A stretch of DNA of 64,000 nt, taken from NCBI GenBank assembly GCA_047495785.1, contig JBLDXI010000029.1, forward strand, positions 2,914,001 through 2,978,000, written 5' to 3'. This document shows, in pieces, positions 12,607 to 61,726 of this stretch (the stretch's first letter is position 1; every line of letters begins with the position of its first letter). Position numbers and translations under genes: made by a program. The DNA comes from Lepidodermella squamata. Its lineage: Eukaryota > Animalia > Gastrotricha. A model generated the notes under the pieces. It had not been told where the DNA came from and made no database searches. It saw nothing but the letters and a program-made list of their open reading frames with translations.

Positions 12607-13893
12607 ATGCTGAAAATATGCAAAAAGCAAAGATTTTTTGCATTAATCCTTTGGCTATGTTCCATTCTACTGTATTTCGTTTACCAATCATTTCTCCCAA
12701 GGGAGAACCGAGATAACTGCTTGAATATCCTTCACCCATGGCCGGACATCGAAATTATAGTGCCAGCTGGTTCGGCTGAGGAAAGCTTCGTCGAATACCG
12801 CGATTACTTCCTTCGGTCCTTGGCTATATTTTGGCCTAGGAACGCCCTTAAATTACGAATTTTGTCCGATTCTGAACGAGAAAATGCAAGCTATTACGCT
12901 GATGAGTTCGAGAAAACGACTCGCAAAGTTTTGGGGCAATCGATTGAGTTCAACCTTGACTTAGTCGGGCCGATAACTGGTCCTCGTGATTCTTATGGCT
13001 GGCATAAATCGCAGTGGATGAAGTTTTGGATCGACAACTTTACAAAATCAGAATTTATCGCGATGGTCGATACGGATGCAGTTTTCATATCGAGAGTCAC
13101 GCTTTACGACTTATTTCGTGATGGGAAACCGATTGTTAGACCGGTTTTTGGGAAACCAAAGGATGACTCGTTATACTGGCGAACCTCTCCTCTTAAAACA
13201 TATCAATTTAGCGGCTATAAAGGTTGTTTTAATTTCCAACGATTTTCAAACATTTTCATTTCATTTACAGAGCCCTTCACCTGCATGTCCTATTTCCCTG
13301 TGGTGCTGAAAACTGCTCATTTGAAAATATTTCGGGATCGAATGATCAAAGTGGGCCGGAGATTTCGAAATTTTTCGAGTTTTGACGAATTATTTCAACG
13401 GCTGATTGAACTCGATGATTACAGCGAGTTTAGCATTATGTGTGCAATCATGTGGAACGAGCTGCGAGATGAATATCATTGGATTATTGCCGAGGAGCAA
13501 CCTGGCTGGTCGGGCGTTATTCTAGGCCAAGTTTCTGGATTCAAAGAGGCTGGTATTGATCCGACTAAACATTTGGCCGTAGAACCTCATGTCACGGTCC
13601 ATTGGACGTACCAACACGAACAATTAGGCGATAATTTGACGTTGGTACTAAGAAGAGGAATTTGCTACTCGATGGCTGATTCTGAAGTCAATAGGCCTGA
13701 ATATTGTGATTCAGAATTTCCTCAACGAAATACCACGATTGATCCAGCTCAATTTCAGTTCGACTGGTCTGATTTCAGTGAAAGACCGGGTGCATTGGAT
13801 TCGCACCTACGTCGGATTAACTTTATCGATTCATGCCCACATACCTGGTTACGATCTGAGCTGGCAGCTTTGCAAACTAGATCCATTGAATGA
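12607..13893 (+). CDS. Type II membrane GT-A-fold glycosyltransferase-like protein, probably with a 48-nt in-frame intron at 13223-13270
   Basis: Short basic N-tail plus TM FFALILWLCSILLYFVY; DxD motif in FIAMVDTDAVF; gttgtt...tttacag segment looks like an intron. Confidence 0.75.
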   Translation: MLKICKKQRFFALILWLCSILLYFVYQSFLPRENRDNCLNILHPWPDIEIIVPAGSAEESFVEYRDYFLRSLAIFWPRNALKLRILSDSERENASYYADEFEKTTRKVLGQSIEFNLDLVGPITGPRDSYGWHKSQWMKFWIDNFTKSEFIAMVDTDAVFISRVTLYDLFRDGKPIVRPVFGKPKDDSLYWRTSPLKTYQFSGYKGCFNFQRFSNIFISFTEPFTCMSYFPVVLKTAHLKIFRDRMIKVGRRFRNFSSFDELFQRLIELDDYSEFSIMCAIMWNELRDEYHWIIAEEQPGWSGVILGQVSGFKEAGIDPTKHLAVEPHVTVHWTYQHEQLGDNLTLVLRRGICYSMADSEVNRPEYCDSEFPQRNTTIDPAQFQFDWSDFSERPGALDSHLRRINFIDSCPHTWLRSELAALQTRSIE

Positions 13894-14583
13894 CATGAAA
13901 TCCAGAAGTAGTAAGGATTAGAACTTTGGATCAGTAATAAATATATGATTTTCGAACCCCAGTTTTGCACGATTGATCTTCTAACAGCTTGAATGATTCA
14001 CGCACCGAGTGTTACATTGGGTATGTATAGCTTTACTACGCTATAATGTAGCAATGGGTGTAAGTTTCAGCTAGTTTTTTTAGAAAAAATACTCATGAAG
14101 TTTGTATAGACGTGAACGTTTGAAGCAATGTATAACGTCGTAAAATGCGTCGTGTGTATACAGTTTTATTAAAGATGAATCATAGCAAAAAAAGCCGCAA
14201 AAAATGGATGAAGAAGTATGTGAAACAGGGGTTGTCGAAAAATCCTTACTATTTCCATATTATTTTCGGTTTCTCGTTTATTACGTCGCCAGCTATAGTG
14301 ACCTTTATAGAATCATGAGTGTCTGATCATCAATGGATGTCCCGGAGATCTTTTTTGTGGCTCACACAGATTGAGCTGAATGCTGAATAAAACACGCCTC
14401 ATTTGACCGCGTTGCCTTGGGCACGATTTGACCACGATCTTTCACTTGCGGCAGAACTTCGTGTCGACGAGCGATGAGTCACCACGGCTTACACGTTGAT
14501 AAGAAAAGTTATCCACTTCTACACCTAACGAAGACTTGCTTATTTTTGTGAATTTTATTTTTAAACTGTTCATTGAACCTGAA

Positions 14584-15549
14584 ATGGCAAGTGAGCAACC
14601 ACGATGCCACGCTGGCTCAGAAGCCGAACCATTAGAACGTGGTTCGCCGTGGTCTGATCATGCGATTTGTCAAATTCCAGGCAGTAGATTTACCGCGACT
14701 GGTTTCATTGTTGTGATTGAACCCAAGACTTACCTCCTGACCAACTACCACGTAATCGGCTGCGATGGAGCGCCCATACTGCTTGGAAAGGGCAGCAAAT
14801 TTACCATCTCATTCCACCAACACCTTCTGGGACCTAACAAAGTGACAGTGAAAATCGGCAAGCATGGGCGATTCTTCTTTGGCTTACGCGAGCTCGATGT
14901 CACTGTCATCGAATTGGGCGAGAAAAAGTGGAAATTACTGCAAAGGCTGGGCATCACCCATTGCCCTTTGGCTCGCCCTGGAAGCCGGGCCGCCATTCCT
15001 ATTGTTAGCGCAGCCGTCGACGTGGTCGGCTATCCTTACATAAAACCTTCGCATGCGAGGTTGGTCAGTCGTATCTCTAGCGGAACAATCGGCGAAGTTG
15101 ATTATCCAACTGTTTTGTACACGGCGCAAACGCATGCGGGCTCATCTGGCGGCCCAGTCTACGTTGGCTCGGTCGTTGTCGGGGTCCATTGCGGCTACAA
15201 TGGCAATGTTGGTTACAACTTCGCGACGCTGTTCGAAGCAATCTGGGAGGGTGTGAGAAGGCCAATGAGGGAGAATCAAGAAAAAAGGGCCGCGCTGCTT
15301 AAAAAAATCCGCGAGGATCGCTTGCGGGCGATTGGAAGGGTTGGATTGGATTTGAGCGACATACCTTACTCGGAGTTCTCGTCTGTTCCCGGGTTGTATG
15401 CGGACGCTGATATCTCGCAGGATAATATGTCAATTGAGGACGCGGAACTCGATTCACCCGACTCGGGGTCAAGCTCAATCTCAGTGTGGGAGAAAACCAA
15501 GTCCGAAGCGTCCAACTCAAACTCGGGCTTCGACTGTCGAATAATGTAA
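14584..15549 (+). CDS. Leaderless trypsin-fold (Trypsin_2 / V8 / FAM111-like) serine protease, group A, C-terminal CaaX
   Basis: Triad motifs LTNYHVI, ELDVTVIEL, THAGSSGGPV, and VGVHCG; no signal peptide; ends DCRIM-stop; ATG at 14584. Confidence 0.85.
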   Translation: MASEQPRCHAGSEAEPLERGSPWSDHAICQIPGSRFTATGFIVVIEPKTYLLTNYHVIGCDGAPILLGKGSKFTISFHQHLLGPNKVTVKIGKHGRFFFGLRELDVTVIELGEKKWKLLQRLGITHCPLARPGSRAAIPIVSAAVDVVGYPYIKPSHARLVSRISSGTIGEVDYPTVLYTAQTHAGSSGGPVYVGSVVVGVHCGYNGNVGYNFATLFEAIWEGVRRPMRENQEKRAALLKKIREDRLRAIGRVGLDLSDIPYSEFSSVPGLYADADISQDNMSIEDAELDSPDSGSSSISVWEKTKSEASNSNSGFDCRIM

Positions 15550-30469: not shown

Positions 30470-31480
30470 AGAAACGTACCAAGCCAATCACGATGCAATG
30501 CTGGATCAGAAGCCGAATTATTACAACATGGTTCGCTGTGGTCTCGTCATGCGATCTGTCGAATTTCACACTGCAAAGGCACTGCGTCTTGTTTCATTGT
30601 CATTATTGAATCAGTGGCATACCTCCTGACGAACCACCACGTCATCGGCGACGGTGAAGCGTCAATACCACTCAGAAAGGGAACAATAATCAATATCACA
30701 ATTCACCCACACCTTCTGAGATCTAAGACGTTTACAGTGAAAATCGGCAAGCACGGGCGATTCTTGTTCGGCTCCCCCGACCTCGATGTAACTGTCATCG
30801 AATTGGGCGAGAACAAATGGAAAATGATGCAAAAGTTGGGCGTCACCGATTGTCCAATTCGTCCGAAAAGCCAGTACGCTATTCCTATGGTAAATCAAGC
30901 CGCCGATGTGGTCGGCTATCCCAACATGAGGCCGTTGCATGAGGAGTTGGACAGTCGCATTTCTAGCGGAAAAATTTTCCAAATAAAGTATCCAACTGTT
31001 TATTACACGGCCCAAACGCGGGTGGGCTCATCAGGCGGTCCAGTATACGTTGATTCGTTCGTTATCGGAGTCCATGGCGGTTACAATGGCAAAATTGGTT
31101 ACAATTATGCGACGCTATTTGAAGCAATCTGGGAGCGTGTGCGTAAACCAATAAAAGACAATCGATTAAGGAGGGCCATGTGGTGTCACCAAGTCCGCGT
31201 GGATCGCTTGCTACCGAAGAATATGGCGACTGGACGAAGCGAAGAGAACCAGAACGATGTCGGCAATTTGAGCGACATACCTTACTCGGCGGAGTTCATG
31301 TCTTTATTCCTGTTACATGCAGAACCTGATATTACACTGGATGATTTGTCAACTGTGGACGAAGAACTCGATTCGCCCGACTCAGGATCAAGCTTAATCT
31401 TAGAGTTCGAGAAATCCAAGTCCGAAGGCTTCGAAACAAACGCGTGCCCGCGTTGTGCCGGCGCCTTGAATGTCATGTAA
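30470..31480 (+). CDS. Leaderless trypsin-fold serine protease, group A; start codon or upstream exon not resolved
   Basis: Frame is open from 30470 (QSRCNAGSEAELL..., homologous to the paralog N-termini); LTNHHVI, DLDVTVIEL, TRVGSSGGPV, IGVHGG; no in-frame ATG before the domain. Confidence 0.7.
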   Translation, partial: RNVPSQSRCNAGSEAELLQHGSLWSRHAICRISHCKGTASCFIVIIESVAYLLTNHHVIGDGEASIPLRKGTIINITIHPHLLRSKTFTVKIGKHGRFLFGSPDLDVTVIELGENKWKMMQKLGVTDCPIRPKSQYAIPMVNQAADVVGYPNMRPLHEELDSRISSGKIFQIKYPTVYYTAQTRVGSSGGPVYVDSFVIGVHGGYNGKIGYNYATLFEAIWERVRKPIKDNRLRRAMWCHQVRVDRLLPKNMATGRSEENQNDVGNLSDIPYSAEFMSLFLLHAEPDITLDDLSTVDEELDSPDSGSSLILEFEKSKSEGFETNACPRCAGALNVM

Positions 31481-34399: not shown

Positions 34400-36275
34400 A
34401 CACCATGCGTCTATTGTCCTCGAGGCTGACATGCCTCGCACTAAGTGCATGTACTTCAACTATAAACACACAAGCCCTTGGATGCCAACGGTTGGCCCAA
34501 GGTGCGCCCTATAACTGACGGTTTTAAGACGTCGTTAGCGTTTCGGTATAACTCTCCATTTGACGGTAACTCCATCTCGCCATTGTTCTCTAGTTGCGGT
34601 AAAAAATTTACCGTAAACGGCACTACCTCGACTCTGAAGCATACATATACTCCTGAGCGGTAAAATTACTTTTTCTGCGGTAAGTTCAGCTCATATTATG
34701 GAGAAAAAGGATAATGGAGTCGGCACTGCGCGCAGATCTGATGGTGCGCGCGCATCCGCTCGCGTCTTGGCTCGCGTTCTTACAATAGAGCGTGTTACGC
34801 AACCGCTGTAGGGCATGACTATAACAGAAGAATTGCCAGTTGATTTACGGTGTTATAAATTGACGCGTTACCATGGTGCGCGAGCGGGATTCCTCCACGG
34901 CTCACATGCAGCATGCTTCTTGCGCTCGCTGTGTCAGCCGTACAGTAAGCGGAAAGACAAAAGCTTACGTTAAATAGTAACTGCCGCAATTGCTTCTACG
35001 TTCTACGGTAAAACTAACGCCGCGTGCGGTAAAAATGTACAAACGCGGCGGCGTTCGTTTTACCGCACAAGCATTGAGGTGACCTTGTTTGCGTGCTGCG
35101 GTAAAATAATTACCGCCAGATGGAGAGTTATACCGAAACGCTAGCGACGTACACATCGCGTCTCGACCGGATATTGAGCTTACTCGATTGAGCTTATTGG
35201 TGGGACGAATTTTCGTCCTGGTGAGGGACACCTCCGCAAGTTAATCCAGGATCACACACCCATTTGGGAGAATTTGCATACCACCGCCAAGGACACCCTT
35301 CAAGTCGTGAGGCGCCTACGGGCTCTCACGCTTCGGGACGCGGAACGTGTGACATACATGATGTCCGCTGATGTCAATGCCATGTATAACCAAGTGCCCC
35401 TCTCAGAGGCTGTCACTGCAGTACGGTGGTATCTAGAGGAATTCCGCAGGTTGCCCGATGATGCAATTGCGCCGGTGTGCGACCTGACGGAGCTGGTCTT
35501 GCGGCACAACACTGTTTCCTTCAATGATAAGTTCTACCGGCAGACGCGCGGCCTTGCCATGGGCGGAAACATCTCGCCCCCAGTGGCCATTTGCTGGCTG
35601 TTCTATAAGGAACGTTGGCTTTCAGTAGGCTCGGGGGCGCTATACACGACGCGTTTCCTTGACGACATTTTCTCCATCTCCCACATGCGGGAGGGACTGG
35701 AGCGCTTTGTTGATGCCTACGAGGGCAGTCACCCTAACATCAAGATAACCGCGGATATTGCGGTGGATAGTCAGCACTTCCTCGACATAAACGTTCAGCG
35801 TTGTGGGAATAGACTGCTGACGTCGCTGTACGTCAAGCCGACAGACAACTTAGCTCTCCTCCATGGTAGCTCGAATCACCCTCGCCATATTTTCACGGGG
35901 ATTATGCGCGGGCAGATCTTGCGATTTCTCCGCATCTGTCAGACACACAGCGCCTTTATGTCAGCATGCGTCCAACTTGGCACTCACCTTAGTAAACGGG
36001 GGTACAGTTGGCACAGCTTTGTTACCCAGCTACACCGGGTAAGTGCTGAGCGCAAGGGACTCAAGTGGCCCTTCGCCAAAGCACGCCGCCCTAGCAGGGC
36101 ATATGCATCGTCGCACACCTTGCCTTACAGCAAGGCGTTGAACCCCCTCTTGGGATTTTTGAAGAGTAAGGTACCACTGGCCTACACGCTTGAGAGCTCC
36201 ATCGGGCAGCGCTATAGGCGTTCAAAGTTCTCACTAACCCCCACTTCTGTATTTACAGGTGTGGCGCCGCGCTGA
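34400..36275 (+). mobile_element. Penelope-like reverse transcriptase, disrupted in its 5' part, with no GIY-YIG domain visible
   Basis: PRTKCMYFNYK, frameshift, HKPLDANGWPKVRPITDG; TTAKDT; SADVNAMY; GLAMGG; RFLDDIF; HFLD; LYVKPTD; SNHP..FTGI..GQILRFLRIC; RGY; LPYS. Confidence 0.88.
34533..35146. mobile_element. MITE with ~37-bp TIRs inserted at an ACGT site in the PLE RT
   Basis: acgt-cgttagcgtttcggtataactctccatttgacggtaa and ttaccgccagatggagagttataccgaaacgctagcg-acgt; removing it restores the frame GFKTYTSRLDRILSLL. Confidence 0.8.
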
Positions 36276-56526: not shown

Positions 56527-58626
56527 GAGACAGCTTCAAATTGCTTCAAACTGAAAATTAATTGTAAATAATATTTTCTGACACGCTTCAGTTCAGTTGG
56601 AAAGGATGATATGTGGATTTTCCAGCCTATTACTCCAAATCAAAATATAACAAATTGTTTAGAATTTTTTTATATTAAAATTCTTATTTTTGATTTATAT
56701 TGCTCTTGTGCGAAGTTACCACCATGAACGGTGAATGTGTTCATTATGTGCTACCTATTTTATTACTATATAATAAGCGCACACGGGCACATGATTGACA
56801 TGCGCGCGTAACAGGCGCGGTGCTGTAATAAAGTAACGACCGATTAGTGTAAAAAAATATGCGAGTGAATGTTACAGTTTAACGTTTATATTTCACGCAC
56901 CCTTAACGAAATTTAAACTATCAAATTAGAAAAATGGATGGACACGCTCAAATTAGTGCTGCGGGATAAATTCAATTTTTTATTGCTGCACTTCCAATAT
57001 CGATAATACAATTCGGTTATTTCTGTAGTATCAGCAATCAGCAGCCTGCAGAGCCAACCTTGAAAATATTTCTAGGTACCTGAGGTCACCAAATAGCGAA
57101 AATGAAATATCCAAGGGGCGAAGGGTGCATTACAAAATTTCAAAAATAGATAAATGGGATTCGATTTCAGGACTCGATTCAAAGGCTACGTAAGTAATAC
57201 CAGTTATCACTTGGAGGAATAGAGACTTCAACTTAGCAATACATTATTAAAACCTTATCGCGATACAGTTCGCCGATTTGACGAGTCAAAATGCTAAAAA
57301 TTGCATTTGCTCATCATTTTTGTCTTATAACGTCCGTTAAATCGCGTCTTCTTGAAAATCCGTTGACGCGGCTGAGTAGCCAGTGTTTCTAGGAGCATTT
57401 TGATATTATATAACAAGCCCACTAATCTCTTATAATAAAATACGCGGCGGGTGTTCTCATTGAACAGCGCGTTTTGTCACGCGCCTCCTTGTCAAAACGC
57501 GCGCGCCTATTGTTAACGGCGGGTGGTGACACAATGTGGTTATCAAATTTAAATAGAGCACATCATGTTAGTAATTGTCACAGAAATTCATTAATTTAGT
57601 CCACGCGTAAACCTACTTTTCAGTCGCTGAAAATATGCGCACACAGAGTGTTTGAATTTGATGGGAAAATGAGTGAGTAGGGCTAACTTTAAACTGGCGT
57701 AATTCAGGTGTATTTGAAAACGGAAAATGCGCAAGTGAGCTCATAGCGCGACTTCGCCCCTTTATATACCCTGTGGTTGACCGCAATTAATCATTTCCTT
57801 GTTAAATTGAGGCAATTAAACCTTCAAATTGTTCGACATTATGACATAATTTCGACGTTTTTCTGACATTTAAGACTACCTGCCACGAAATTTGATGGAT
57901 TAATTGCTTAATTGATGGATATGTTACATAACTTGATTAGTTTCAATCGCCATTAATCAAATACTTGACAGGTATACTCTAAAATTATGACATTTTAATG
58001 GCTCAATCAACCACATTAAGTTGTGCAACATAGTTTTATTGCACCTGATTTCTGAGCGCGCTGATTGGTTCACGCGTGCATTAACCGCGCACGCTGATTG
58101 GCCAATTCAATTTTCACACTAAATTTTATTAGGCGCTGAAATTATTGCGCGCAATATATTATATTATGCGCGCGAGTGTCAAAATGCGGATTATTGCGTT
58201 AGAGTGCGGCTATTATGCATTTTCCATAATTATTGGTACCTAATATTTTTATAGCTCATTTATTTTAAGGCGGCGTTGTTGAACCAATGATGAGTTTTTG
58301 ACCTGTTTTGTGCCCAATTTTCAGCCCCGCATCTTTGATTGCAACAGTCTCCCGTTTTTCCTATTATTCAAGGTGGAATAAGTGCAAATCCTATGGGGGT
58401 GTAACGCGATACCTAATATCCGCGCTCAGCTACTCAATCATATTTGTCAATGAGAACGCGCGAGTGTTTATCGCCATATACAACTAATGACCCATGTTTA
58501 CCACCTATTGTCCTGATATAAGTCGCGATAGCCTCTTCACTTGACAACACGAAAAACCATCGTTATAAACAAAAGTCTTATAACCGGACGCGCATCATAT
58601 TTTCCGCGCGGCTCATTGCAGTTATT

Positions 58627-60354
58627 ATGGCGAATAAATTTCCACATCAAATCGCTAGCCAGTTGTTCGATTCGGTTGACTGGCTTCAGCTTAATTCACG
58701 CCTCAATCGATTGAGATACATTGATGACTCATCATCGGTCGCATCTTCATCGAGGTCGAATAAACCGCCGAAACCAACCGTGCGACTCGTCACGCTTGAC
58801 CACGTCACGGCTATCAGTGAAGCGAGACGAATTATCAACGATGAAGCGGCAGCTTTGCGACATTTGGCCAACTCAATGATAGGTTACAAAAAAATTGGGT
58901 TATAATAAAATCCACCTTAATATTTTGAAAATTATAAAATCCTCCTTAATTTGAATTTTTCAATTATTATTTTTTAGGCGCTTCCTTCGCCAAAGCATGT
59001 GAAGTTTTACTCACCCTACGAGGTCGAATTATTGTCAGCGGCCTGTCGAAAGGTGGCCATGTCGAACGAAAATTGGCCGCCGCTCTCGCTCAAACAGGCT
59101 CGCCCGCCTTCTTCCTACACCCGGACGACCTAGGCTACCACGGCGAGTTGGACTCGATTAATCAGGGCGATGCTTTTATTGTGCTGTCGCAGAGTGGCGA
59201 AGTTCCAGAATTGATACCGGCGCTTTTACGGGCTCAACGGCTGGGTGTTGCAATAATTGCAGTTACGGCTAAAAAAGGCAGCCAATTAGGCGATTTTGCG
59301 CAAATTTGTGTAAGCTCAAAAATTAGAAAAATTTGAAAGTTTCAACTGTTTTGAAAATTTTGAATTTTGAAATTTCTTGAAATTAAAAAATGAAGATTTC
59401 AAATTATTAAAGTTTCAAAATTACTGACTCGGTTTAATAATTTGAAAAATTATTTTAAAATTTTCTGATTTTTTTTGAAAAATTGAAATCCATTGAAACT
59501 GAATTTTTTGAAAAATTCTATTTTTAAACGATCAAAATTGAAATTTAATAATTAAAATATTCTTTTTAGCTGGAAATTCCGGATTTACCCGAGGCTCATT
59601 TGCTATCGAATTTTCCGACCACGTCGAGCCAGTGCATGGCCGCCCTGGGTGACGCCCTCGCTGTGTGCACCCAACGAGCGAGGCGAGGCGTGGCGAGTCG
59701 TGACTACCACATTCAACGCACGAAATGGCGCCACCGACCCGTTAAAGATATCATGTCAACTGTAAGTTCAAAATTTTCAAATTTATTTAGGATTTTTTCA
59801 AATTTTCAAATTTACCCGATATTTTAATTTTAATTTTCAATTTGAAAAAATCGAAATTCCTAAATTTTGGATTGATAGCCGATTATTTGACTAGCTTCCC
59901 AATTTTTGTCCAGGATCCTCTTCGATTGCCATGTACAGTCCTTCAGTCATGCAAATTAACCGAAGCGATGCCGAAATTGCTGTACAGCCACGCTGGCCTC
60001 GTCGGCGTAATTAACGACCAGGGTCAATTGATCGACGCAATAACCGACGCCGACATTCGCCTGCTCGCTAAATCGAATTGCCTCGATCTAACCGTAGATG
60101 AAGCGCTGATTCAAGCGAATTCTCTAGGCCGTAGTAGCGCGCTTACCCTAGGCTATTGCGTGCTGTTTGAAACTGAACATGTTATGGATGCGGTGGTCAA
60201 AATGTCGGCTCACGGCCTACGAGGCGCGTTTGTTATCAACGAACAGGCTGAAACTGTTGGCTATTTGTCGCTGGCTGATTGCTTAGAGGCTGGAATTCTA
60301 CCCGTTTCGGCTCTTATCAAGGCAGAAACTGGCGCGGAGCCTACTAAATTATGA
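58627..60354 (+). CDS. KdsD/KpsF/GutQ-like SIS-CBS protein (arabinose-5-phosphate isomerase family), 4 exons: 58627-58882, 58978-59309, 59570-59761, 59914-60354
   Basis: EARRII..EAAAL, GRIIVSGLSKGGHV.RKLAA.LA.TGSPAFFLHP..HGEL, LSQSGE, EA....PTTS...LGDALAV, VKDIM, and a CBS pair (LIDAITDADIR, VGYLSLADCL); three GT-AG introns. Confidence 0.9.
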
Positions 60355-61726
60355 AAATAATATTTCAAAAATAAATGTTCGAAAATAAATTCTCGACATC
60401 CCTCTGAGACCAAACATGAACTATATTATCGGGAGCAGTAATGGTGCTTAATCATATTTTTGGTAAATGAAATGTCTGTCCTACCTGAATTTTTCATTAA
60501 TTTTTCCAATAAAATGTTGTATCGTCATTCGTAAAAATAGGTAACTCTATACTCTATGGTTCTCGCATTCTTCACTTAGCGAGTTTTTGGTTTGTTTTTC
60601 ACATCGAATTTCCCGCATTTCTCGCATGCTCAACAAATTGCTGCTACTGAATCGCAAAATTGGGCTGTAGGACGCAAGATGGTTCTGCTCGGTTGGCTTC
60701 GGATGGCTGTCAAACTGTCAAAAGACCCTTCAACACCTCAGTTAACAGAGCGCTTTCAAAGTCGACGAAAAACTCGAGTGGCGAAATCCGTTCTTGAACG
60801 AAAGGCTGCTATTTGCCATGGTGTCAGGAATCGCTCGAAACATCTGTATCGCTGTTCTGTATCTTCTTGCTTTCAATGTCGCAATCGATGCCCTGTTGCG
60901 ATTTCTGGGATTCAATGCTGCCTGAGCTCTCTTCGATTTCATCGAATGCTGGCCGATTGTTTGGATTGATTGGAATTAATTTTCCAAGTTCCAGTTCTGG
61001 GTATAAGGCATATCCTAGCTAAATGGCTGAGATCAGATACGAGTAGGTATGCGCCAGTGAGCACAGGTATATGTCAGAAACTGCCCATGACACCATGGCG
61101 AATCTTTTAAAATCTTGAAAGAATTTACCCTTAAATATGTCCACCTCGAAAAGCTGAACAACATTGTTTTTGGAAAATGAGGCGACAATTTTGCATTGAA
61201 AACTGTATTGAGTTGAAAACCGGCGAAATTCTTGGCTTCAAATGAATATTGGTCACCATTTTAACATAGAAAAATAGGGATGGTCGAATCGTTTTCAGTG
61301 TTAAATTGAGACTCGAGGACAACAAAATCATTGGCAAAATTTTTAAAAAGCTGAATCAAATCTTTGCGCAAAAACAAGTCAAACAATTTTAAATCAAATC
61401 TTTCGAAATCAAACCTCAATAAAAACCCAAACACAGCAACAAATGCACCCAAATACACCTAATCAAAATTAATACGAGAGCGAAACGTCATCCTTTAATT
61501 GCATTGTTTATTCACAAGGTAAGGCGATAGTGATGACCTAAAGAAGCGATTGTTTCCATGATTGCAAGGAGAAAAGTATGCTTTTTTTTCCTGCCATCAT
61601 TAGAGCATTATGATTTATGAGCGCAATTAGGATGCAACGAATAAAATAAACTCGGGCGAAAACTTATACAAGTCTCTTCCCTTGTAGTGGAATATGACAA
61701 TCGCAGTAGCAATCGCTTAAAATTAT

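What the first reader, a model, noticed from the sequence alone, without database searches (positions are those of the whole stretch)
58627..60354. Intron-containing bacterial-type KdsD/KpsF (SIS-CBS) gene in an animal, with an altered active site
Seen: a full SIS plus tandem-CBS protein split by three spliceosomal introns, lying among animal genes, so not contamination. Established: arabinose-5-phosphate isomerases feed Kdo synthesis in Gram-negative bacteria and plants, and animals are not known to make Kdo. Seen: equivalents of E. coli KdsD K59, H88, E111 and E152 appear retained, but the DFAxxHPGGxLG motif carrying catalytic H193 reads DYHIQRTKW, and GxGKSG reads GLSKGG. Inference: a domesticated horizontally acquired gene, possibly repurposed as a sugar-phosphate or nucleotide sensor, or with a new activity.
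Basis: partly seen in the sequence, partly recalled or inferred. Interest (0 to 1): 0.78.

Follow-up and report, generated by a model that had tools for sequence, protein, structure and literature searches.

The report
Altered bacterial-type sugar isomerase gene in animal
A small invertebrate carries a spliced, transcribed and selectively maintained copy of a bacterial-type sugar-phosphate isomerase gene whose catalytic loop has been replaced, so it probably binds a ligand or regulates rather than making the bacterial sugar precursor.

Summary
A four-exon gene with GT-AG introns (58627-60354, + strand) encodes a 406-residue SIS plus tandem-CBS protein. Its best family matches are KdsD/GutQ/KpsF arabinose-5-phosphate isomerases.

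- **Transcription:** an RNA-like run covers only exons 2-4 and carries the exact intron-2 junction.
- **Selection:** 24 of 25 listed exonic differences from a second haplotype are synonymous.
- **Relatives:** it is one branch of a small eukaryotic family. Four paralogues sit on animal-type contigs of ENA metagenome assemblies. All five copies form one clade (100/100), share one intron position, and are nearest to bacterial KpsF at about 50% identity. That favours an old bacterial acquisition; the donor is unresolved.
- **Active site:** three of those paralogues keep GKSG, HGxLG and HPGGxIG. The window gene and its 44%-identical orthologue share a remodelled loop (S/T-K-G-G-H-V-E-R-K) and have lost the His193 loop, which now reads K-W. 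Each keeps only one of the two invariant histidines.
- **Constraint:** it has shifted from the SIS domain (45% identity) to the CBS pair (52%).

Most likely this is a repurposed ligand-binding or regulatory paralogue, not a standard isomerase. The scan had already noted two other KdsD/KpsF genes elsewhere in this genome (s1-410364, s1-387844). The full-length protein could not be folded or searched.

The parts
58627..58882 (+). Exon 1. It encodes an N-terminal extension of about 55 aa absent from bacterial KdsD, then the first helix of the SIS domain. The extension holds a Y-I-D-D motif followed by a Ser-rich stretch, shared only with the L008-type orthologue.
   Evidence: Gene model. Alignment. 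The second haplotype has an in-frame 6-nt insertion at 58749.
58883..58977 (+). Intron 1 (95 nt, GT..AG, phase 1). It is absent from the homologues on the metagenome contigs.
   Evidence: The second haplotype has indels that are not multiples of three at 58923, 58961 and 58965.
58978..59309 (+). Exon 2: first half of the SIS domain. It holds the remodelled phosphate loop G-L-S-K-G-G-H-V-E-R-K (59040-59072), H140 (the H88 equivalent) and E163 (the E111 equivalent).
   Evidence: Pfam SIS 3.9e-14. KdsD/GutQ/KpsF models. 2xhz 3e-19. Conservation table.
59310..59569 (+). Intron 2 (260 nt, GT..AG, phase 0). All four homologues on the metagenome contigs have an intron at the same position.
   Evidence: RNA-like run X2 has the joint 59309>59570 with GT..AG ends. 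Shared position.
59570..59761 (+). Exon 3: second half of the SIS domain. It holds E204 (the E152 equivalent), P-T-T-S-S, G-D-A-L-A, and the shortened loop D-Y-H-I-Q-R-T-K-W (59702-59728) in place of the invariant H-P-G-G-x-L-G.
   Evidence: Weak KpsF/KdsD match.
59762..59913 (+). Intron 3 (152 nt, GT..AG, phase 0). It is absent from the homologues.
   Evidence: In-frame stop at 59827. X2 has no depth over 59839-59919, though exons 3 and 4 on either side are covered..
59914..60354 (+). Exon 4: tandem CBS (Bateman) pair with a roughly 12-residue insert between the two CBS motifs, shared by all five eukaryotic copies, then the stop codon. The sequences I-T-D-A-D-I-R and Y-L-S-L-A-D are kept.
   Evidence: Pfam CBS 2.2e-08. 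Alignment. It is 52% identical to the orthologue, against 45% for the SIS domain.

Best explanation
This is a functional animal gene. It descends from a bacterial-type KpsF/KdsD arabinose-5-phosphate isomerase gene that entered this lineage long ago, gained introns and duplicated. The window copy belongs to an old, fast-evolving branch of that family. In this branch the phosphate-binding loop was rebuilt (G58S, S60G, G64E) and the loop that carries the second catalytic histidine (H-P-G-G-x-L-G) was deleted and replaced by a basic K-W loop. The new states were then conserved. I infer that it no longer works as a standard arabinose-5-phosphate isomerase. It more likely acts as a ligand-binding or regulatory SIS-CBS protein. 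It could work alone as a small-molecule sensor, or as a non-catalytic subunit that assembles with the canonical paralogues; bacterial KdsD is a tetramer whose active sites are built from several subunits (stated from my own knowledge). Shown here: gene structure, transcription, purifying selection, family membership, shared derived changes, and monophyly of the eukaryotic copies. Inferred: loss of isomerase activity, the regulatory role, and the bacterial donor.
For: - **Structure and family:**
- **Transcription and splicing:** run X2 covers only exons 2-4 and carries the joint 59309>59570.
- **Selection:** 24 synonymous against 1 non-synonymous among the 25 listed exonic differences. P is about 6e-14 under neutrality. 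The only exonic indel is an in-frame 6-nt insertion.
- **Orthologue:** the L008/P0007 type is 44% identical over residues 22-391 (tblastn 1e-102).
- **Tree:** all five eukaryotic copies form one clade (100/100). Window plus L008 group at 100/99 on a stem of 1.40 changes per site. The canonical three group at 98/91.
- **Shared features:** a shared phase-0 intron position and a shared CBS insert.
- **Conserved columns:** of 82 columns that are at least 90% conserved in 76 bacterial sequences, the canonical copies keep 55-59, the window protein 49 and L008 40. H193, P194, G196 and G199 are 100% invariant in those bacteria and present in the three canonical eukaryotic copies, but missing here.
- **Histidines:** the window protein keeps H88 but not H193. 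L008 keeps a His at the 193 position but has N at 88.
- **Frozen new motif:** K-G-G-H-V-E-R-K is identical in both orthologues, although their SIS domains are only 45% identical.
- **Constraint pattern:** window against L008 is SIS 45% and CBS 52%. Canonical L004 against L002 is SIS 69% and CBS 31%.
- **Nearest non-eukaryotic relatives:** bacterial KpsF at about 50% identity, and every named one is bacterial.
- **Nesting:** with the divergent pair left out and E. coli KdsD as outgroup, the canonical copies nest weakly (84) inside an alphaproteobacteria-rich group.
Against: - K59, H88, E111, E152 and most Ser/Thr phosphate-binding residues are still present in the window protein, so residual or altered isomerase activity is not excluded.
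- The catalytic roles of H88 and H193 are cited from memory of the E. coli and Bacteroides fragilis structure papers, which I could not open. Only their invariance was measured here.
- No structure could be predicted for the full protein.
- No interaction data exist.
- The canonical paralogues of this genome are known to me only from other agents' notes.
- The donor is unresolved. The stem is long and the bacterial sample was chosen by similarity to one paralogue.
- No plant or algal sequences were in the tree.
Confidence: 0.6

Rival explanations
1. It is still an arabinose-5-phosphate isomerase, or a closely related sugar-phosphate isomerase, with a variant active site. Another residue, such as H243 or H251 near the shortened loop, replaces H193.
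For: K110, H140, E163, E204, S-Q-S-G-E and P-T-T-S-S are retained. The window protein has a much shorter terminal branch than its orthologue (0.45 against 1.32), so it is the more conservative of the two. Strong purifying selection.
Against: H193, P194, G196 and G199 are invariant in 76 bacterial and 3 canonical eukaryotic sequences, and all are absent here. S60G and G64E alter the phosphate loop. The orthologue lacks H88 and G89. Constraint is now higher in the CBS pair than in the SIS domain.
Confidence: 0.2
2. The family is not a bacterial transfer. It is either an old eukaryotic gene lost from most animals, or a gene acquired from another eukaryote such as an alga.
For: The eukaryotic clade sits on a long stem (0.45 + 1.15 changes per site) and has no well-supported bacterial sister. 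Plant and algal KdsD could not be added to the tree. A short AT-rich contig (L157, P0107) may hold a further eukaryotic homologue.
Against: In an exhaustive HMMER search of 1.84 billion representatives, and in a word search of 5.8 billion proteins, every relative outside the four metagenome clusters looks bacterial, and every named one is bacterial. No annotated animal, plant or algal protein appears among the best 120-150 hits. With E. coli KdsD as outgroup, the canonical copies nest inside bacterial diversity. A 2024 paper states that eukaryotes have no obvious homologues of this isomerase (PMC11301363).
Confidence: 0.15
3. It is a decaying pseudogene, or bacterial contamination or a chimera of the amplified-DNA assembly.
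For: Active-site residues are lost. The genome was probably assembled from amplified DNA of a single animal (PMC11660948).
Against: The reading frame is intact across four exons with canonical splice sites. The polymorphism ratio is 24 synonymous to 1 non-synonymous. An intact orthologue exists in a second species. Coverage in X2 is restricted to exons and includes a splice junction, and a third run holds exon 4. GC content matches the flanks. DNA depth across the gene is similar to its immediate flanks.
Confidence: 0.03

Closest known systems
Bacterial KdsD / GutQ / KpsF arabinose-5-phosphate isomerases (NCBIfam NF008141, NF008581, TIGR00393; PDB 2xhz, 5uqi, 3etn)
   Same: Same SIS plus tandem-CBS layout. 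Best family and structure matches. K59, H88, E111, E152, the S-x-S-G-E motif, the P-T-x-S motif and G-D-A-L-A are all retained.
   Different: It has three spliceosomal introns, a roughly 55-aa N-terminal extension and a roughly 12-aa insert in the CBS pair. G58S, S60G and G64E change the phosphate loop. One residue is inserted before H88. The invariant H-P-G-G-x-L-G loop is deleted. SIS identity to E. coli KdsD is only 31%.
Canonical eukaryotic paralogues on ENA metagenome contigs (L002/P0003, L004/P0001, L005/P0002), and the two KdsD/KpsF genes noted elsewhere in this genome (s1-410364, s1-387844)
   Same: Same clade (100/100), same phase-0 intron position, same CBS insert, and all have N-terminal extensions.
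   Different: Those copies keep G-K-S-G-H, H-G-[DE]-L-G and N-H-P-G-G-N-I-G, so they look catalytically competent. Two of them have lost the CBS T-D-x-D motif, which the window protein keeps.
L008/P0007-type gene (ENA assemblies ERZ23486787 and ERZ27333047)
   Same: It is the orthologue. It shares K-G-G-H-V-E-R-K, the Tyr insertion before the H88 position, the deleted loop with K-W, and the Y-I-D-D plus Ser-rich N-terminal motif. Full-length identity is 44%.
   Different: It has one intron instead of three. H88 is N and G89 is R. It keeps a His at the 193 position. Its terminal branch is three times longer.
Non-catalytic SIS domains of bacterial RpiR/MurR regulators, and pseudoenzyme paralogues that regulate their active relatives (from my own knowledge; not tested here)
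   Same: A sugar-phosphate-binding fold kept without the full catalytic set. The paralogue is maintained by selection alongside copies that look active.
   Different: It has no DNA-binding domain. There is no evidence yet that it binds a ligand or pairs with the canonical copies.

Membership tests
KpsF/GutQ/KdsD arabinose-5-phosphate isomerase | One SIS domain followed by a tandem CBS pair | tested here: met
   Pfam SIS in exon 2 and CBS in exon 4. Full-length alignment to E. coli KdsD.
KpsF/GutQ/KdsD arabinose-5-phosphate isomerase | Scores above the curated whole-protein cut-off of the family model | tested here: inconclusive
   Only exon pieces could be scanned. The TIGR00393 bit scores of 75, 15.2 and 25.7 add to about 116, against a cut-off of 203.7. 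That is a rough sum, and the spliced protein could not be submitted.
KpsF/GutQ/KdsD arabinose-5-phosphate isomerase | Invariant G-x-G-K-S-G-H-I-G-R-K phosphate loop | tested here: not met
   It reads G-L-S-K-G-G-H-V-E-R-K. K59 is kept. G58, S60, I63 and G64 are each 100% conserved in 76 bacterial sequences, and all four are changed here.
KpsF/GutQ/KdsD arabinose-5-phosphate isomerase | First invariant histidine (H88) in H-G-D-L-G | tested here: met
   H140-G-E-L-D. The His and Gly are kept and the last Gly is Asp.
KpsF/GutQ/KdsD arabinose-5-phosphate isomerase | Second invariant histidine (H193) in H-P-G-G-x-L-G | tested here: not met
   The loop is four residues shorter and reads H-I-Q-R-T-K-W, with R246 at the H193 position.
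KpsF/GutQ/KdsD arabinose-5-phosphate isomerase | Acidic residues E111 and E152 | tested here: met
   E163 and E204.
KpsF/GutQ/KdsD arabinose-5-phosphate isomerase | Interconverts ribulose-5-phosphate and arabinose-5-phosphate | not testable with these tools
   Needs an enzyme assay or complementation of the E. coli kdsD gutQ mutant described in PMC11301363.
Gene acquired by an animal from bacteria | Resides in the host genome: introns, host-like composition, transcription | tested here: met
Gene acquired by an animal from bacteria | No orthologues in other animals; nearest relatives are bacterial | tested here: met
   The only eukaryote-like relatives are four clusters from one set of metagenome assemblies. 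No named animal protein was found. The searches used pieces or paralogues, not the full protein.
Gene acquired by an animal from bacteria | Nested inside a bacterial clade with support | tested here: inconclusive
   The clade attaches among alphaproteobacterial groups with weak support (84) when E. coli KdsD is the outgroup. No plant or algal sequences were included.
Pseudoenzyme or repurposed enzyme paralogue | Loss of invariant catalytic residues while purifying selection continues | tested here: met
   The orthologue shows the same derived states.
Pseudoenzyme or repurposed enzyme paralogue | Lacks the ancestral activity and has a regulatory or binding role | not testable with these tools
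   Requires biochemistry.

The most novel reading that the evidence does not exclude
The protein is a non-catalytic subunit, or a stand-alone sensor, that controls the canonical isomerase paralogues descended from the same acquired bacterial-type gene. That would give an animal a regulated route to arabinose-5-phosphate-derived sugars built entirely from a gene of bacterial type. Alternatively, the rebuilt pocket (K-G-G-H-V-E-R-K plus the K-W loop) catalyses or binds something that no known SIS protein does.
Probability: 0.25. Interest if true: 0.75.

Novelty: new variant of a known kind. Interest (0 to 1): 0.55.

Why it matters
Arabinose-5-phosphate isomerase is treated as a bacterial (and plant) enzyme with no obvious homologue in other eukaryotes (PMC11301363). 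Here an animal lineage keeps a whole family of such genes. One branch has been rebuilt around a changed pocket and a conserved CBS module, and it has been maintained across two species. This gives a natural case of an acquired bacterial enzyme diversifying into active-looking and repurposed forms inside animals. It also raises a testable question: which arabinose-5-phosphate-derived or related metabolite do these animals make or sense?

Tried and rejected
- **Spliced protein has no reference.** No full-length database search, cluster look-up, structure prediction or fold search was run. Exon pieces and paralogue ids were used instead.
- **Word search with the exon-4 open reading frame** gave nothing. 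Given its limits, this is uninformative.
- **Word search with P0007** found only itself.
- **JGI metagenome scan** for K-G-G-H-V-E-R-K and S-F-A-K-A patterns returned 65 loci of ordinary bacterial type. None has a K-G-G-H loop.
- **Synteny.** tblastx of the metagenome contigs against the window found no matches beyond the gene itself and ankyrin repeats.
- **Exon 3 alone** has no PDB match. The CBS exon gives only generic CBS matches.
- **E. coli KdsD active-site paper** (PMC3009410) is not held.
- **Supplements of the metazoan gene-transfer compendium** are not held.
- **Sample names of the metagenome assemblies** found no paper, so the second host is unidentified.
- **Earlier notes** mention no kdsA, kdsB or kdsC in this genome. 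That is not evidence of absence.
- **Pseudogene and contamination readings** were rejected; see the rival explanations.

Full report
**1. What is in the sequence**

On the + strand, four open segments join through canonical GT..AG introns into a 1221-nt coding sequence of 406 residues. The exons are 58627-58882, 58978-59309, 59570-59761 and 59914-60354.

- Exon 2 matches Pfam SIS (3.9e-14) and exon 4 matches CBS (2.2e-08).
- Among NCBI's curated models, the best for every informative exon are GutQ, KdsD and KpsF arabinose-5-phosphate isomerases.
- The best solved structure is the SIS domain of E. coli KdsD (2xhz, 3e-19).
- GC content matches the surrounding DNA.

**2. Is it a live gene of this organism?**

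Contigs of three public runs were laid on 58300-60700.

- **X1** covers exons, introns and flanks. It contains the window's haplotype plus a second one.
- **X2** matches without differences but covers only exons 2, 3 and 4. It has no depth over most of intron 2 (59353-59514) or the 3' half of intron 3 (59839-59919). It holds a contig that joins 59309 to 59570 with GT..AG ends, which is exactly the predicted intron 2. X2 is therefore RNA-like and shows splicing. Exon 1 and the junctions of introns 1 and 3 were not covered.
- **X3** holds most of exon 4 with a few differences.

Of the 25 listed differences between the window and the second haplotype that fall in exons, 24 are synonymous and one is a Val/Leu change. 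About 25-27% of random single-base changes in this coding sequence would be synonymous. The chance of at most one non-synonymous change in 25 is therefore about 6e-14 to 6e-13. The table was truncated (28 rows were not shown), so this is a sample.

The only exonic indel is an in-frame 6-nt insertion in the Ser-rich N-terminal region. Intron 1 and the 3' flank carry indels that are not multiples of three. This is a gene under strong purifying selection, not a decaying copy or a contaminant.

**3. Relatives**

An exhaustive HMMER search with exon 2 against 1.84 billion representative proteins found no hit better than 55% identity. The top three hits (P0001-P0003) and P0007 have long N-terminal extensions. 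They come only from ENA metagenome assemblies.

Their contigs have 36-40% GC. They carry animal-type neighbours: a Cys-loop receptor ligand-binding domain, a kinase-guanylate cyclase, C2H2 zinc fingers and ankyrin proteins. The four genes recur together in the same assemblies, so they are probably four paralogues of one unidentified eukaryote.

Each is split by a single phase-0 intron at exactly the position of the window's intron 2. Full-length models were built in scripts. By tblastn, the window protein is 44% identical to the P0007-type gene (locus L008) over residues 22-391 (1e-102). It is 30-52% identical to the other three over shorter segments.

A word search with the canonical paralogue P0003 returned its paralogues first. 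After those came only bacterial-type KpsF proteins at about 45-56% identity. Every named one is bacterial, mostly Alphaproteobacteria. No annotated animal, plant or algal protein appeared.

**4. Tree**

I used 75 named bacterial KpsF genes from species-representative genomes (5 of the 80 loci fell outside the length filter), E. coli KdsD and the five eukaryotic models.

- A careful IQ-TREE run places the five eukaryotic copies in one clade (100/100).
- The window protein and L008 are sisters (100/99) on a stem of 1.40 changes per site.
- The three canonical copies form the other branch (98/91).
- The tool warned about long branches. The groupings are independently backed by rare shared characters: the intron position, a roughly 12-residue insert between the two CBS motifs in all five copies, and, for the divergent pair, the indels described below.
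- The duplication that produced the divergent branch therefore predates the split of the two host species.

With the divergent pair left out and E. coli KdsD as outgroup, the canonical trio nests in an alphaproteobacteria-rich group. Support is weak (84) and the stem is 2.29.

An old acquisition from bacteria is the best reading, but the donor is unresolved. The bacterial sample was chosen by similarity to one paralogue, and no plant or algal KdsD could be included.

**5. The active site**

In an alignment with 76 bacterial sequences, 82 columns are at least 90% conserved. The canonical eukaryotic copies keep 55-59 of them, the window protein 49 and L008 40.

The canonical copies keep G-L-G-K-S-G-H-I, H-G-[DE]-L-G and N-H-P-G-G-N-I-G-R-R.

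The window protein keeps these residues:

| E. coli KdsD | Window protein |
|---|---|
| K59 | K110 |
| H88 | H140 |
| E111 | E163 |
| E152 | E204 |

It also keeps S-x-S-G-E, P-T-T-S-S and G-D-A-L-A.

Its changes fall into two groups.
- **Shared with L008:** G58S (Thr in L008), S60G, I63V, G64E, a Tyr inserted before H88, and a shortened loop in place of H-P-G-G-x-L-G (four residues shorter in the window protein, three in L008) that now contains K-W.
- **At positions where L008 differs:** G92D and C154H.
- R246 now sits at the H193 position.

L008 has also lost H88 (N) and G89 (R), but it keeps a His at the 193 position. Each orthologue therefore retains only one of the two invariant histidines, and a different one in each.

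From my own knowledge of the E. coli and Bacteroides fragilis structure papers, which I could not open here, these two histidines are the proposed catalytic pair, and the second is supplied across a subunit interface of the tetramer. What I measured is only their 100% invariance.

The rebuilt loop K-G-G-H-V-E-R-K is identical in the two orthologues, although their SIS domains are only 45% identical. The new state is therefore itself constrained.

**6. Where the constraint lies**

| Pair | SIS identity | CBS identity |
|---|---|---|
| Window vs L008 | 45% | 52% |
| Canonical L004 vs L002 | 69% | 31% |
| E. coli KdsD vs a Terasakiella KpsF | 52% | 40% |

- The divergent pair also keeps the CBS sequences T-D-x-D-I and S-L-A-[DE].
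- Two canonical copies have lost the first of these.
- A Y-I-D-D motif followed by a Ser-rich stretch in the N-terminal extension is shared only by the divergent pair.

**7. Interpretation**

The most economical reading is this. A transferred isomerase gene became established and duplicated. One branch was released from catalytic constraint, rebuilt its ligand pocket, and has since been conserved for a function centred on ligand binding. It would act either as a sensor or as a non-catalytic partner of the canonical paralogues.

A residual or altered isomerase activity of the window protein cannot be excluded, because most first-shell residues remain. I put about 0.6 on repurposing and about 0.2 on retained isomerase-type activity. 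Whether the gene came from bacteria or from another eukaryote is a separate question; I give the alternative origin about 0.15.

**8. Organism and earlier notes**

Other agents' notes attribute this genome to the gastrotrich Lepidodermella squamata (s1-421969). I checked only that the published assembly fits: 122 Mb, 157 contigs, 43% GC, year 2024 (PMC11660948). This matches the scan's statistics (about 1995 windows on about 148 pieces), the window's roughly 42% GC and the year of X1. That is circumstantial. The genome paper never uses the word 'horizontal'.

The scan had already noted two other KdsD/KpsF genes on other pieces of this genome (s1-410364, s1-387844). I could not read them. I infer, but did not test, that they correspond to the canonical paralogues.

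A 2024 paper states that eukaryotes have no obvious homologues of this isomerase and describes the E. coli complementation assay that would settle activity (PMC11301363).

**9. Limits**

The spliced protein has no reference, so it was not searched, folded or looked up as a whole. Pathway partners (kdsA, kdsB, kdsC) could not be sought in the genome. 

Noticed in passing
window 60568-60700: Just downstream of the gene, contig depth in run X1 jumps from about 100 to about 3800, with several variant contigs. This marks a high-copy repeat.
   Followed up: no
window 58616-58626: The sequence T-T-G-C-A-G lies five bases upstream of the ATG (T-T-A-T-T in between) and has no donor paired to it in the model. 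Other agents report spliced-leader trans-splicing in this genome, so this may be a leader acceptor site. X2 gave no coverage of exon 1 to test it.
   Followed up: no
window 58749 (second haplotype in run X1): An in-frame 6-nt insertion (two residues) in the Ser-rich N-terminal stretch. Across the gene the second haplotype differs at roughly 3% of sites, almost all synonymous in exons.
   Followed up: partly
window introns 58883-58977 and 59762-59913, compared with L008, L002, L004 and L005: The window gene has three introns. All four homologues on the metagenome contigs have only the shared middle one. So introns 1 and 3 were either gained in this lineage or lost in the other. Introns 2 and 3 are full of short TTTGAAA/TTTCAAA-type repeats. 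An X1 contig joint at 59375>59767 is probably caused by them.
   Followed up: partly
window 12607-13893 (+), 14536-15549 (+), 30614-31480 (+), 35274-36275 (+): Long single open reading frames: a DUF6492 protein (428 aa), two Trypsin_2-type peptidases, and a reverse-transcriptase fragment. The first three could be further candidates for bacterial-type genes.
   Followed up: no
L157 147-740 (P0107, ENA ERZ27233573, 954-nt contig): A SIS fragment of canonical type with a Gln/Ser-rich N-terminal extension of about 90 aa. It ends two codons from the family's shared intron position and has AT-rich flanks. It may be a further eukaryotic homologue, but the contig is too short to tell.
   Followed up: partly
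L002, L004, L005-L007 and L008-L010 (ENA ERZ23486787, ERZ23486764, ERZ27333047, ERZ27332993): One unidentified eukaryote in these metagenome assemblies carries four paralogues of this family: three canonical and one divergent. They sit on contigs of 36-40% GC with animal-type neighbours (Cys-loop receptor domain, kinase-guanylate cyclase, zinc fingers, ankyrin proteins).
   Followed up: partly
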